This document shows, in pieces, positions 36,738 through 43,952 of a stretch of DNA of 64,000 bases (position 1 is the first letter of the stretch; every line of letters begins with the position of its first letter). The notes below the pieces were generated by a model. The model did not search any database, was not told where the DNA came from, and saw nothing but the letters and a program-made list of their open reading frames with translations. The position numbers were made by a program, and so were the translations under genes. This stretch comes from Chrysemys picta bellii (Eukaryota). The stretch spans positions 23,498,001 through 23,562,000 of the forward strand of contig NC_088807.1 of NCBI RefSeq assembly GCF_011386835.1, read 5' to 3'.

Positions 36738-39700
36738 ATGACCAACCAGGTGGAGTTGGCCCTGGGGGATGGGCCCCACCTCAGCCTGGACCCGCTGCCC
36801 AAGGCCTGCCTGGCGAAGCGCTGCGGCTGGCTCACCCGCAACCTGCTGCTAACCCTCACCATCCTGGGTAGGTGGGAGCCCCGGGGGCCTGTAGGGGGCG
36901 CTGGGGTGCGAGGAGCAGGGTGGGGGGCCCAGCAGGGGGCGCTGGGGTGCGGGGGATGGGCTGGGGCCAGTAGGGGGCGCTGGGTGTCGGGGGTGGGGTG
37001 GGGCCCAGCAGGGGGCGCTGGGGGGCAGAAGGTGGGGCAGGAAGCCCAGAGCTAGGGGGCAGGGGCAGAAGGTGGAGTAGGGGACCTACCCATTCCCCCC
37101 CCCCAGCCTTCCCCCACATCTCTCCACCCCCACCCCCCGTCTCTATCATTACACACAAACAGGTGATCAATGGGTGGGGGATCAGATGTGACCCCCCCAC
37201 ACCCAGACCACGGGGCGGCATGTGATTATCGTCTCATTGTGTCGTTTACGTCACTACCTGGGAGGAAGAAAATTAAACATGGTCTAATCCCCCCCCTCCC
37301 CAGCGGCTGTTGGCTTGACCCCCCACCCACGCGGTCACCTTCCCCCCCCCCCCCCGCAAAGTGGGCGGGTTCACATATGGGATCATTGTAAGCCCCAATG
37401 CAGGCTAGGGGGCGCTCTCCCCAGAGAGGGGGTCCCCATATACCCACGCCCCACCCCAGAGCCAGCCGCATCCCAGCGCCCGGCGAGGGGTCCCCGGATA
37501 CCCAGTCCCCACGCCCCACCCCAGAGCCAGCTGCATCTCAGTGCTGGAGGGGAACCCTATTGGGGGTCGTGCTGAGGTTCCGTCCCCTCGTCTCTAGGGG
37601 TCATTCTGGGCGCCGTGTTTGGGGGCCTCCTGCGGCTGCTCCCCCCGCTGGACGAAGACCTGCTGGTCCTTATCTCCTTCCCTGGAGACATCCTCATGCG
37701 GATGCTGAAAATGCTCATCTTGCCCTTGGTCATCTCCAGCCTCATCTCAGGTGAGGGCGGGGGGCCGGGGACAGCGGCTGGGGCCAAAAGCTGAATCTCG
37801 TTCCCCCTCATGGGATTCGAACTCGCGGCGCTCGGGAGCAGCACAGGGCTGTGGTACCCAGCCTAGCCACCGGGGGAGAGGGGTTAGACCGACCACCCAC
37901 AGGGTGCTGTGCTGCATGGAGCAGGGCGAGGGACTCATTATGGGGCATTGTCCCTGTATACCCAGCCCCCCCTGCCCCACCCCAGAGCCAGCCGCATCCC
38001 AGCGCCCGGCGAGGGGGTCCCCGTATACCCAGCCCCCCCTGCCCCACCCCAGAGCCAGCCGCATCCCAGCGCCGGGCGAGGGGTCCCCGTATACCCAGCC
38101 CCCACGCCCCACCCCAGAGCCAGCCGCATCCCAGCGCCCGGCGAGGGGTCCCCGTATACCCAGCCCCCAGCCCCACCCCAGAGCCAGCCGCATCCCAGCG
38201 CCGGGCGAGGGGTCCCCGTATACCCAGCCCCCGCGCCCCACCCCAGAGCCAGCCGCATCCCAGCGCCGGGTGAGGGGTCCCCGTATACCCAGCCCCCGCG
38301 CCCCACCCCAGAGTCAGCCGCATCCCAGCGCCGGGTGAGGGGGTCCCCGTATACCCAGCCCCAGTGCCCCACCCCAGAGCCAGCCACATCCCAGCGCTGG
38401 GCGAGGGGTCCCCGTGTAGCTTTCGCTCTGTTCCTGGGCAGGGCTGGCAGGACTGGATGCCAAGTCGAGCGGGCACATGGGCACCCGGGCCATGGTGTAT
38501 TACATGTCCACCACGGTGCTGGCCGCCGTGCTGGGCGTGATCCTGGTGCTGTCCATCCACCCGGGCAACCCCAAGCTGAAGACGGCGACGGGCGCGGCGG
38601 AGCGGAACGAGGAGGTCTCTAGCCTGGACGCCTTCCTGGATTTAATCCGGAACCTCTTCCCCGAGAACCTGGTGCAGGCCTGTTTCCAACAGGTAGGGGG
38701 CGCTCGCCCAGCAGGCAGTGCCCCCAGGCAGCACTAGGGGGCGCTGGGCTGCAGAGTGTGGGTCTGGAGGGCTCAGCAGGGGGCGCTCTCCCCAGGCAGG
38801 CAATGCCCCAGGGAGTCACTAGGGGGCGCTGGGCTGCAGGGTGTGGGGCCGGGGGGCTCAGCAGGGGGCGCTCTCCCCAGGCAGGCAATGCCCCTGGGAG
38901 GCACTAGGGGGCGCTGGGCTGCAGGGTGTGGGGCGGGGGGGCTCAGCAGGGGGCGCTCGCCCAGGCAGGCAGTGCACGCAGGCAGCACTAGGGGGCGCCG
39001 GGCTGCAGGGTGTGGGGCCGGGGGGCTCAGCAGGGGGCGCTCTCCCCAGGCAGGCAATGCCCCAGGGAGTCACTAGGGGGCGCTGGGCTGCAGGGCGTGG
39101 GGCCGGGGGGCTCAGCAGGGGGCGCTCTCCCCAGGCAGGCAATGCCCCAGGGAGTCACTAGGGGGCGCTGGGCTGCAGGGCGTGGGGCCGGGGGGCTCAG
39201 CAGGGGCGCTCTCCCCAGGCAGTCCGGGCTGAGCCTGGTTCCCTTGCCCAGGTCCAGACGGTGTCCCAGAAGGTGCCGGTCCCGCCCCAGGTGGTGCGGC
39301 AGGAGAACATCACCCGGCTGCTCCCGGGGAACCTGTCCCTGCTCAACGCCACCGTCACAGAGATCAACCTGGGGCCCAGCACCCTCACCCAGAAACGGCT
39401 GGAGTTCAAGGCGGGCATGAACGTGCTGGGTAAGTCCCCGGCGGGCCCCGGCTGCGGGGAGGCTCGCAGCAACCGGAGTGCCCATCTGAGGGCACTGTTG
39501 GGGGAAAGCTCACAGCGCTGGGGCACTGCTGTGGGGAAGCTCGCAGCAACCGGAGTGCCCGTCTGAGGGCACTGCTGGGGGAAGCTTGCAGTGCTGGGGC
39601 ACTGTTGCGGGGAAGCTCACGGCATTGGAGCACTGCTGCAGGGAAGCTCGCAGCAACCAGAGTGTCAATCTGAGGGCACTGCAGGGGGGATGCATGCAGC

Positions 39701-42700: not shown

Positions 42701-43952
42701 GGGCGGTGCCTCAGTGTAGGGGGCGGGGCCAGGGTGTTTGTGTGATTAGACCAGTGGCAACCCTATCCCCAGACCCCCGGCCCTCGACCTCCTGGGCCCC
42801 ACAGCGGGGAAGGGTCCCCTGCCCCCTGCATTGACCCCCACCCCCCTCCCTGCCCCCTAGCCTGACAGCCACCCTGGCCAGCGTGGGCGCGGCCAGCATC
42901 CCTAGCGCCGGCCTGGTCACCATGCTGCTCATTCTGACGGCCGTGGGGCTGCCCACGCAGGACATTAGCCTGCTCATCGCCGTGGACTGGCTGCTGTGAG
43001 TGCCGGGGGGCGGGGCAGGGTGGGGCAGAAGGGGAGGGGTTAGGGGGCAGGAGGGATGGGGAGGGGTTAGGGGGCAGGGAGTGGGCAGGAGGGATGGGGA
43101 GGGGGAATTAGGGGCAGGAGGGATGGGAGGGAGTTAGGGGGCAGGGAGTGTGAAGGAGGGATGGGGAGGGGTTAGGGAGCAGGGAGTGTGCAGGAGGGAT
43201 GGGGAGGGGGAATTAGGGGCAGGAGGGATGGGAGGGAGTTAGGGGGCAGGGAGGGGTCCCCCCATGTGGGTGCCCCCCAGCGCTGACCCCTGGCCCCACC
43301 CCCCAGGGACCGCCTGCGCACCTCCATCAACGTGGTGGGGGACTCGTTCGGGGCCGGCATCGTTTACTACCTGTCCCGGGCCGAGCTGGCGGCCGTCGAC
43401 GCCCGGGCCGAGGGGCGCCCGCCCGAGCCCCCCAGCCCCAAGGTCCCGCCGCTACCCAACCACCAGGGGCCCCCCGAGGGCGCCGGGGTGGGGTACACGG
43501 CCCTGCCCGCCGCTGACAGCGAGGAGGAGGAGCAGGTGAGGCCGCTGTGCTGCGAGCTTCCCACAATAGTGCCCCCAGCGCGGCGAGCTTCCCCACAACA
43601 GTGCCCCCAGCGCTGCGAGCTTCCCAACAACAGTGCCCCTGGCGCTGCAAGCTTCCCCACAACAGTGCCCCCAGCGCGGCGAGCTTCCCCGCCACAGTGC
43701 CCCCAGCGCTGCGAGCTTCCCCACAACAGTGCCCCTGGCATGGCGGAGCTTCCCCACAACAGTGCCCCCAGCGCGGCGCGCTTCCCAGCCACAGTGCCCC
43801 CAGCGCTGCGAGCTTCCCTGCGACAGTGCCCCGGGTAATTTGGTTCCTGTCCCCAGCAGGCGGAGACGCCGTCATGGGAGCCGGGGGCCGAGGCCGAGGG
43901 GCCCGAGGGGTGGCCGGGCAGTGACCAGGAGGAGAAGGAAGAGGAGGAATAA
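36738..43952 (+). CDS. excitatory amino acid transporter, EAAT2-like, probably SLC1A9/EAAT7 (575 aa, 10 coding exons)
   Basis: Exons 36738-36867, 37598-37750, 38442-38692, 39252-39429, 40199-40325, 41389-41622, 42012-42206, 42861-42995, 43307-43535, 43857-43952 total 1728 nt in frame; motifs [55 protein letters not shown]; an upstream exon is possible because an AG lies just before the ATG. Confidence 0.9.
37940..38420. repeat. intronic minisatellite, about 60-bp unit
   Basis: Repeated ccccaccccagagccagccgcatcccagcgccgggcgaggggtccccgtatacccagc. Confidence 0.85.
38693..39215 (+). repeat. intronic about 85-bp minisatellite with two CTCF-like motifs per unit
   Basis: Alternating CACTAGGGGGCGC and CAGCAGGGGGCGC, about 12 motifs. 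Confidence 0.8.
39450..40155. repeat. about 29-bp minisatellite (gggcactgctggggggaagctcgcagc)
   Basis: Tandem copies; the same unit recurs inverted at 43545-43830 in the same gene. Confidence 0.85.
40791..41132 (-). mobile_element. degenerate solo LTR in antisense orientation within an intron
   Basis: Reverse complement of the 7869-8383 family (tgtca start, tttattagccgacaggaaca, aacattcccacgtcatcac). Confidence 0.7.

What the first reader, a model, noticed from the sequence alone, without database searches (positions are those of the whole stretch)
36738..43952. Intact EAAT2 sister gene, candidate SLC1A9/EAAT7
Seen: complete 575-aa frame with no indels; the acidic-substrate Arg (DRLRT) and the K+-coupling Glu (ALYEAV) are kept; the C-terminus is Pro-rich then acidic (EEKEEEE*) and unlike recalled SLC1A2 tails. 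Known: SLC1A2 lies on human 11p13, which is paralogous to 19q13.3, and SLC1A8/SLC1A9 subfamilies are reported as lost in therian mammals. Inference: this is the retained ohnologue, whose physiology is poorly characterised.
Basis: partly seen in the sequence, partly recalled or inferred. Interest (0 to 1): 0.75.

Follow-up and report, generated by a model that had tools for sequence, protein, structure and literature searches.

The report
Painted turtle SLC1A9 (EAAT7) gene
This is the painted turtle's intact copy of SLC1A9/EAAT7, an old sister gene of the main brain glutamate transporter EAAT2 that mammals and apparently birds lack; it is real and under selection, but it is already annotated (as "EAAT2-like") and the subfamily was described in 2010.

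Summary
Window 36738-43952 (+) carries a 10-exon, all GT-AG gene. It encodes 574 aa, or 575 aa with an alternative acceptor 3 nt upstream. The two forms are identical to RefSeq XP_005312885.1 and XP_065427133.1 of Chrysemys picta bellii, both named "excitatory amino acid transporter 2-like".

- **Phylogeny:** in a maximum-likelihood tree the protein sits in a strongly supported clade (97/99) with sharks, coelacanth, lungfish, amphibians, lepidosaurs, alligators and turtles. That clade contains the sequences Gesemann et al. 2010 named SLC1A9_xt and SLC1A9_ac. An AU test rejects grouping with SLC1A2 (p about 2e-27).
- **Separate SLC1A2:** the same species has a 123-kb SLC1A2 gene on a 156-Mb chromosome.
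- **Synteny:** neighbours are FLT3LG (upstream) and PTH2/TIP39 (downstream), matching human 19q13.33.
- **Selection:** dN/dS is 0.16-0.21.
- **Functional residues:** all EAAT transport motifs are present.

It is most likely a Na+/H+/K+-coupled glutamate/aspartate transporter with an anion conductance, like zebrafish EAAT7.

The only small addition is that turtles and alligators keep SLC1A9, so the 2010 statement that archosauromorphs lost it applies to birds at most. Interest is low.

The parts
36738..36867 (+). Coding exon 1 (130 nt, starts at ATG; N-terminus MTNQVE...)
   Evidence: Donor is GT. It matches Caretta at 90% and Alligator at 85% over the same 130 nt. The 'MTN' start is shared by alligator, Anolis, salamander, Xenopus and zebrafish SLC1A9.
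37598..37750 (+). Coding exon 2 (153 nt, TM1 region)
   Evidence: AG/GT borders. Pfam SDF profile positions 10-51.
38442..38692 (+). Coding exon 3 (251 nt)
   Evidence: AG/GT borders. Pfam SDF positions 54-132.
39252..39429 (+). Coding exon 4 (178 nt, variable extracellular loop with three N-x-S/T sequons at N197, N205, N210)
   Evidence: The 178-nt size equals Anolis SLC1A9 and differs from the 157-169 nt of the tetrapod SLC1A2 rows shown. This exon is missing from the Ensembl/UniProt model A0A8C3HNH3.
40199..40325 (+). Coding exon 5 (127 nt)
   Evidence: AG/GT (GTATGG donor) borders. Pfam SDF positions 139-178.
41389..41622 (+). Coding exon 6 (234 nt)
   Evidence: AG/GT borders. Pfam SDF positions 181-254.
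42012..42206 (+). Coding exon 7 (195 nt; HP1 SSAGT, NMDGT motif, E399)
   Evidence: AG/GT borders. Pfam SDF positions 256-318, E 8e-23.
42861..42995 (+). Coding exon 8 (135 nt; HP2 SIPSAG)
   Evidence: AG/GT borders. Pfam SDF positions 321-364.
43307..43535 (+). Coding exon 9 (229 nt; TM8 D469/R472, then Pro-rich tail with GYTALP)
   Evidence: AG/GT borders. Matches Caretta at 92% over 229 nt. Tail dN/dS is 0.14.
43860..43952 (+). Coding exon 10 (90 nt + TAA stop; acidic end EEKEEEE). An alternative in-frame acceptor at 43857 adds one Gln.
   Evidence: The two acceptors reproduce RefSeq isoforms X2 (574 aa) and X1 (575 aa) exactly.

Best explanation
The locus is the painted turtle orthologue of SLC1A9 (EAAT7). 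SLC1A9 is the vertebrate sister subfamily of SLC1A2 (EAAT2). It arose before the split of cartilaginous and bony vertebrates and is absent from therian mammals.

The protein is an intact SLC1 transporter with every residue known to be needed for coupled acidic amino-acid transport. By inference it takes up glutamate/aspartate with 3 Na+ and 1 H+ in exchange for 1 K+, and carries the uncoupled anion conductance common to EAATs. By analogy with zebrafish EAAT7, I expect a low-capacity transporter with a prominent chloride conductance that acts mainly in retina or other neural tissue.

Shown here: gene structure, identity, orthology, synteny and purifying selection. Inferred: stoichiometry, anion conductance and tissue.
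For: - **Gene model:** ten GT-AG exons, identical to RefSeq XP_005312885.1 / XP_065427133.1.
- **Family:** Pfam SDF is matched colinearly across the exons. The closest solved structures, searched with the 93%-identical Caretta orthologue, are human EAAT2 at 774 bits, against 538 for EAAT1 and 482 for EAAT3.
- **Motifs:** SSAGT (HP1), NMDGT, E399, SIPSAG (HP2), D469 and R472 are all present.
- **Tree:** in the careful ML tree the window protein lies in a 29-sequence clade (UFBoot 97 / SH-aLRT 99) whose internal order follows the species tree from sharks to turtles. SLC1A2 proteins of the same turtle, lizard and amphibian species lie outside it.
- **AU test:** the test rejects window + SLC1A2 (delta lnL 153, p 1.95e-27).
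- **Name link:** the clade holds P0131 and P0127, which match SLC1A9_xt and SLC1A9_ac in Additional file 7 of PMC2873418.
- **Exon sizes:** 130/153/251/178/127/234/195/135 equal those listed for Anolis and Xenopus SLC1A9, including the diagnostic 178-nt exon 4.
- **Synteny:** Flt3_lig lies directly upstream in Caretta and Alligator and in the window. TIP39/PTH2 lies about 12 kb downstream. PMC2873418 places the lost human SLC1A9 at 19q13.3.
- **Selection:** dN/dS is 0.21 against Caretta and 0.16 against Alligator.
Against: - No teleost slc1a9 protein could be fetched by id, so the link to the fish gene rests on the frog and lizard sequences named in the 2010 paper and on signature residues read from its supplement.
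- SLC1A2 monophyly itself was not resolved in the careful tree. The branch collapsed, although it had SH-aLRT 96 in the quick tree.
- Function is extrapolated from zebrafish, which diverged about 430 My ago (my estimate). The turtle branch evolves several times faster than SLC1A2 (branch lengths).
Confidence: 0.93

Rival explanations
1. It is the turtle's SLC1A2 (EAAT2) orthologue itself, merely sitting in a GC-rich region.
For: It is 73% identical to SLC1A2 over the first 505 residues. Nine of the ten exon sizes are the same or nearly the same. RefSeq names it 'EAAT2-like'.
Against: The same species has a distinct SLC1A2 (P0086), a 123-kb gene on a 156-Mb chromosome. The AU test rejects grouping with SLC1A2 (p 2e-27). 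The tail is unalignable with SLC1A2 tails.
Confidence: 0.01
2. It is a lineage-specific (turtle or sauropsid) duplicate of SLC1A2, not the ancient SLC1A9 subfamily.
For: High similarity to SLC1A2. Bird orthologues are absent.
Against: Orthologues with the same N-terminus and tail occur in alligators, lepidosaurs, tuatara, frogs, salamanders, lungfish, coelacanth and elasmobranchs. They form one clade that follows the species tree. Synteny with FLT3LG is shared with alligator.
Confidence: 0.01
3. The frame is intact but the gene is silent or decaying (a young unitary pseudogene). It could equally have lost transport and act only as an anion channel or partner subunit.
For: No RNA evidence was obtained. 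The branch is faster than for SLC1A2. There are a few turtle-specific changes in conserved stretches, for example DRLRT where other sequences have DRMRT.
Against: dN/dS is 0.16-0.21 over 467-571 codons, including the tail. All splice sites are canonical and conserved in Caretta. All coupling and substrate residues are kept. Full-length models exist in at least ten turtle species.
Confidence: 0.05

Closest known systems
SLC1A9 / EAAT7 (Gesemann et al. 2010, PMC2873418; zebrafish function in Niklaus et al. 2024, PMC11288666)
   Same: Same clade as the paper's SLC1A9_xt and SLC1A9_ac. Same exon sizes, including the 178-nt exon 4. Same 'MTN' start, and signature residues shared with SLC1A9_dr read by eye from the supplement (LAGLDA.SSG.MG, GIASLI, LPIGAT). 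Same 19q13.3-type neighbourhood.
   Different: The teleost gene has a much longer penultimate exon (433 nt against 229 nt) and a shorter exon 4 (106 nt). The turtle protein's transport and anion currents, and its expression site, are unmeasured. The 2010 paper stated that archosauromorphs lost SLC1A9, on bird data only; turtles and alligators keep it.
SLC1A2 / EAAT2 (GLT-1), solved structures 7vr7, 7xr4
   Same: 73% identity over the membrane core. All transport motifs are identical. Same intron positions and phases.
   Different: A separate locus (7.2 kb against 123 kb in the same species), a different C-terminal tail, a different exon 4 length and different neighbours. It is a distinct clade.
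Tiger salamander sEAAT2B (UniProt O57323; Eliasof et al. 1998, cited from memory and via PMC2873418)
   Same: O57323 (P0129) falls in the same clade as the window protein and shares the N-terminus and the GYT.LP tail motif. Gesemann et al. say the salamander retina clones fall in the two new subfamilies.
   Different: It is an amphibian orthologue at about 70% identity. The original paper could not be read here, so its functional data are not used.

Membership tests
SLC1 / sodium:dicarboxylate symporter family (Pfam PF00375) | Colinear match to the SDF profile across the membrane core | tested here: met
   Exons 2, 3, 5, 6, 7 and 8 match profile positions 10-51, 54-132, 139-178, 181-254, 256-318 and 321-364. 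Exon 7 alone gives E 8e-23.
EAAT (acidic amino-acid transporting SLC1 members, as opposed to ASCT) | TM8 Asp and Arg that bind the substrate (DxxR in D-R-x-R-T), TM7 NMDGT, the K+-coupling Glu, HP1 SSxGT and HP2 SIPSAG | tested here: met
   D469, R472, NMDGT 391-395, E399, SSAGT 357-361 and SIPSAG 435-440 are present and identical to SLC1A2 in the alignment. The roles of these residues are established knowledge of EAAT and GltPh biochemistry, not tested here.
SLC1A9 / EAAT7 subfamily | Groups with named SLC1A9 sequences to the exclusion of SLC1A2 | tested here: met
   The clade has 97/99 support and holds P0131 (= SLC1A9_xt) and P0127 (= SLC1A9_ac). The AU test rejects window + SLC1A2, p 1.95e-27.
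SLC1A9 / EAAT7 subfamily | Groups with teleost slc1a9 (the type members) in a tree | not tested
   No teleost slc1a9 protein was obtained by id; the third search returned slc1a2b. Only signature residues were compared by eye with SLC1A9_dr and SLC1A9_ol in the paper's supplement.
SLC1A9 / EAAT7 subfamily | A separate SLC1A2 gene exists in the same genome | tested here: met
   P0086, C. picta bellii EAAT2, is a 123-kb gene on a 156.6-Mb chromosome next to a CUB/EGF/Sushi/Trypsin gene.
SLC1A9 / EAAT7 subfamily | Neighbourhood corresponding to human 19q13.3 | tested here: met
   Flt3_lig exons lie at 30363-30882 (+) and TIP39 at 56283-56705 (+) in the window. Flt3_lig lies directly upstream in Caretta and Alligator. 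The human map positions of FLT3LG and PTH2 are from my own knowledge.
SLC1A9 / EAAT7 subfamily | Exon-size signature (variable exon 4 and the last two exons differ from SLC1A2) | tested here: met
   The window has exon 4 = 178 nt, as in Anolis SLC1A9 (184 in Xenopus), against 157-169 in the tetrapod SLC1A2 rows shown. Its last exons are 229 + 90 nt, against 232 (229 in Xenopus) + 69-75.
SLC1A9 / EAAT7 subfamily | Low-capacity glutamate transport with a dominant anion conductance; retinal ON-bipolar expression | not testable with these tools
   Known only for zebrafish.
SLC1A2 / EAAT2 orthologue | Monophyly with SLC1A2 of other vertebrates | tested here: not met
   AU test p 1.95e-27 against it.

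The most novel reading that the evidence does not exclude
Because turtles and alligators both keep SLC1A9 next to FLT3LG in a very GC-rich block (GC3 82-94%), its reported loss in birds may be an assembly or annotation artefact rather than a real loss. This would be the kind seen for other 'missing' bird genes of human-chromosome-19 type regions. Alternatively, the loss is real and bird-specific, which would date it after the bird-crocodilian split. In either case the turtle gene could be the molecular basis of the transporter-type, glutamate-gated chloride currents long recorded in reptile and amphibian retina.
Probability: 0.2. Interest if true: 0.45.

Novelty: already known. Interest (0 to 1): 0.2.

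Why it matters
It matters little as a discovery. The exact protein has been in RefSeq for years and the subfamily was defined in 2010.

It is useful as a correction and a caution in three ways.
- Public names ("EAAT2-like", and plain "EAAT2" for the Chelonia, Alligator mississippiensis and Anolis copies) hide the fact that non-avian reptiles carry an eighth or ninth SLC1 gene.
- The literature statement that archosauromorphs lost SLC1A9 holds at most for birds.
- Turtle retina, a classic physiology preparation, has a candidate EAAT7 that could be tested against the zebrafish findings.

Tried and rejected
1. **Teleost slc1a9 by protein search.** The one teleost hit high in the list (P0121, Coryphaenoides) proved to be a tandem or fused slc1a2b. 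The third and last word search therefore returned only slc1a2b. The name link was made through the sequences in the 2010 paper's supplement instead.
2. **RNA support.** The look-up of sequencing runs gave 14 runs guessed to be RNA that hold only 7-11% of the words.
3. **Pfam on long ORFs around the gene.** Ten ORFs of 213-363 aa gave nothing. In this 65-70% GC DNA long ORFs are mostly noise.
4. **A fucosyltransferase gene in the window.** I looked for one at 26041-27241 and 5217-6586, because Caretta has a Glyco_transf_11 gene call at the matching edge of its locus. No FUT-like frame is visible there, so this was dropped as synteny evidence.
5. **Very long outgroups.** Plutella P0019 (branch length 10) and the metaclust protein P0002 distorted the quick tree and were left out of the careful one.
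6. **Eliasof et al. 1998.** The paper is not held.
7. **Human sequences.** Human SLC1A2 proteins in the hit lists were not used. No contig taken for human was met.
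Full report
**What is there**

The window is 60-74% GC throughout. Between 36738 and 43952 on the + strand I assembled ten coding exons from stop-free frames and read the junctions base by base.

The exons are 36738-36867, 37598-37750, 38442-38692, 39252-39429, 40199-40325, 41389-41622, 42012-42206, 42861-42995, 43307-43535 and 43860-43952. Every intron begins GT and ends AG, and the phases fit. The CDS is 1725 nt, which gives 574 aa plus TAA, with GC3 of 93%.

The two translations are identical to RefSeq XP_005312885.1 (574 aa) and XP_065427133.1 (575 aa). 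Both are named "excitatory amino acid transporter 2-like" and belong to Chrysemys picta bellii, on a 27-Mb chromosome record. This confirms the earlier scan note that the genome is painted turtle. It also shows that the gene is already annotated. The Ensembl-derived UniProt models are poorer. For example, A0A8C3HNH3 (503 aa) is 100% identical over exons 2, 3 and 5-9 but lacks exons 1, 4 and 10.

**Is it a working SLC1 gene?**

Pfam SDF (PF00375) is matched colinearly by exons 2, 3, 5, 6, 7 and 8. Using the 93%-identical Caretta orthologue as query, the best solved structures are human EAAT2 (774 bits), well ahead of EAAT1 (538), EAAT3 (482) and the ASCTs.

The residues that define coupled acidic amino-acid transport in this family are all present: HP1 SSAGT (357-361), NMDGT (391-395), E399, HP2 SIPSAG (435-440), and D469 and R472 in DWLLDRLRT. 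Their roles are established knowledge, not tested here. The extracellular loop exon carries three N-glycosylation sequons.

I fetched the orthologous loci of Caretta caretta and Alligator mississippiensis. All ten exons in Caretta, and exons 1-9 in Alligator, are found with the same sizes and splice sites. The only differences are two 9-nt indels in Caretta.

| Comparison | Codons | dN/dS (Nei-Gojobori) | dS |
|---|---|---|---|
| Window vs Caretta, whole CDS | 571 | 0.21 | 0.14 |
| Window vs Caretta, tail only | 66 | 0.14 | 0.20 |
| Window vs Alligator, exons 1-8 | 467 | 0.16 | 0.55 |

The gene is therefore under purifying selection.

**Which SLC1 gene?**

A full-length search with the Caretta orthologue ranked the hits in this order:
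- first turtles;
- then alligators (about 79% identity);
- then lepidosaurs and tuatara;
- then about twenty amphibians, lungfish, coelacanth and elasmobranchs;
- only then true SLC1A2 proteins, including that of Chrysemys picta bellii (P0086, 72-73% identity over the core).

No bird or mammal sequence appeared above the SLC1A2 level.

A careful maximum-likelihood tree (56 rows, LG+C20+F+G4) places the window protein in a 29-sequence clade with UFBoot 97 / SH-aLRT 99. The internal order of that clade follows the species tree: elasmobranchs, coelacanth, lungfish, amphibians, then lepidosaurs and (alligators + turtles). The SLC1A2 proteins of the same turtle, lizard and amphibian species lie outside it (the quick tree is). 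An AU test rejects a tree in which the window protein is held together with SLC1A2 (delta lnL 153, p 1.95e-27).

Gesemann et al. 2010 (PMC2873418) defined SLC1A9/EAAT7 as the former "slc1a2c", the SLC1A2-like extra subfamily. They found it in teleosts, Xenopus, Anolis and elephant shark, and placed its lost human site at 19q13.3.

Their Additional file 7 prints SLC1A9_xt and SLC1A9_ac. These match P0131 (Xenopus tropicalis) and P0127 (Anolis carolinensis) of my clade. I checked this with the N-terminal and tail peptides and by reading the printed sequences.

Their exon table gives Anolis SLC1A9 as 153/251/178/127/234/195/135 and Xenopus exon 1 as 130, which is exactly the window's series. SLC1A2 differs in the loop exon (157-169 nt in the tetrapods shown) and in the last two exons, which are 232 (229 in Xenopus) + 69-75 nt against 229 + 90 nt here. 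I could not get a teleost slc1a9 protein by id, so that part of the membership test is by eye only.

**Synteny and the second locus**

In Caretta and Alligator the gene directly upstream, on the same strand, carries Pfam Flt3_lig. In the window the corresponding exons at 30363-30512 and 30706-30882 hit Flt3_lig. Downstream, 56283-56705 (+) encodes a TIP39/PTH2 precursor end (E 9e-27), and 60516-61202 (-) encodes a galanin-type peptide. This agrees with earlier notes of this scan.

FLT3LG and PTH2 lie in human 19q13.33 (my own knowledge), which is the region named by Gesemann et al. The true SLC1A2 of the same species spans 123 kb on a 156.6-Mb chromosome. It sits beside a gene with CUB, EGF, Sushi and Trypsin domains, which I read from memory as PAMR1, the 11p13 neighbour of human SLC1A2.

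**How it most likely works**

Gene structure, orthology and selection are shown. Function is inferred. I expect a trimeric Na+/H+/K+-coupled glutamate/aspartate transporter with an uncoupled anion conductance.

The only functional data on the subfamily that I could read are for zebrafish EAAT7. It sits at ON-bipolar dendritic tips. Its transport currents are as small as those of EAAT4, and it has a dominating anion conductance (PMC11288666). I take that as the best guess for the turtle protein.

The tail is specific to the subfamily. Sauropsids share NHQGP.EG...GYT(A/V)LP followed by an acidic run, and amphibians share FSGYTSLP. It is under constraint, which suggests a conserved trafficking or partner-binding role. 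No such role was tested.

**What could not be done**

Expression was not established. No listed run holding the stretch is on record as RNA. I worked beside those places afterwards.

**Novelty**

The gene, the protein models and the subfamily are all public. The one small addition concerns the 2010 paper's statement that archosauromorphs lost SLC1A9, which rested on chicken and zebra finch. Turtles (at least ten species) and both alligators keep it beside FLT3LG, so the loss is at most bird-specific. Given the extreme GC content of this block, a loss in birds should be re-checked in complete assemblies.

Public naming is misleading. The Chelonia mydas, Alligator mississippiensis and Anolis copies are called plain "excitatory amino acid transporter 2".

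Noticed in passing
window 36884-43832 (introns 1-6, 8, 9): Eight of the nine introns (all but intron 7) hold a GC-rich minisatellite, for example 65 bp x 7 at 37950-38415, 85 bp x 6 at 38695-39222 and 31 bp x 16 at 39674-40156. The 32-bp array in intron 9 (43552-43832) is the reverse complement of the intron 4 array. Exons 5-9 are therefore flanked by inverted repeats of about 280-480 nt, an arrangement that in other genes favours back-splicing. This was not tested.
   Followed up: partly
window 39252-39429, 36738-36867, 43860-43952: The Ensembl-derived UniProt models of this gene in C. picta bellii (A0A8C3HNH3 at 503 aa, A0A8C3HP45 at 417 aa) are incomplete. A0A8C3HNH3 skips exons 1, 4 and 10 and reads into intron sequence instead. 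The RefSeq models are complete.
   Followed up: yes
P0321, P0122, P0127 (other species): The SLC1A9 orthologues of Chelonia mydas, Alligator mississippiensis and Anolis carolinensis are named plain 'excitatory amino acid transporter 2' in NCBI records. At least in Chelonia and Anolis, two different genes then carry that name in one genome.
   Followed up: partly
window 5217-6586 and 26041-27241: Two copies about 20 kb apart of a roughly 1-kb non-coding segment. Both align to the same stretch of the Caretta locus (L001:1-1124) upstream of FLT3LG. No fucosyltransferase-like frame is visible in either copy, although Caretta has a Glyco_transf_11 gene call ending there.
   Followed up: partly
window 56283-56705 (+) and 60516-61202 (-): There is a TIP39/PTH2 precursor exon (Pfam TIP39, E 9e-27) and a galanin-type peptide exon (KR-GWTLNSAGYLLGP, Pfam Galanin E 1e-7).
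   Followed up: partly
window 45349-48449 and 53111-53627: These blocks are conserved with Caretta (80-85%) and partly with Alligator. They overlap minus-strand gene calls of 129-389 aa that have no Pfam family. My Pfam scans of the long ORFs there found nothing. The identity of this downstream neighbour is open.
   Followed up: no
   Followed up: no
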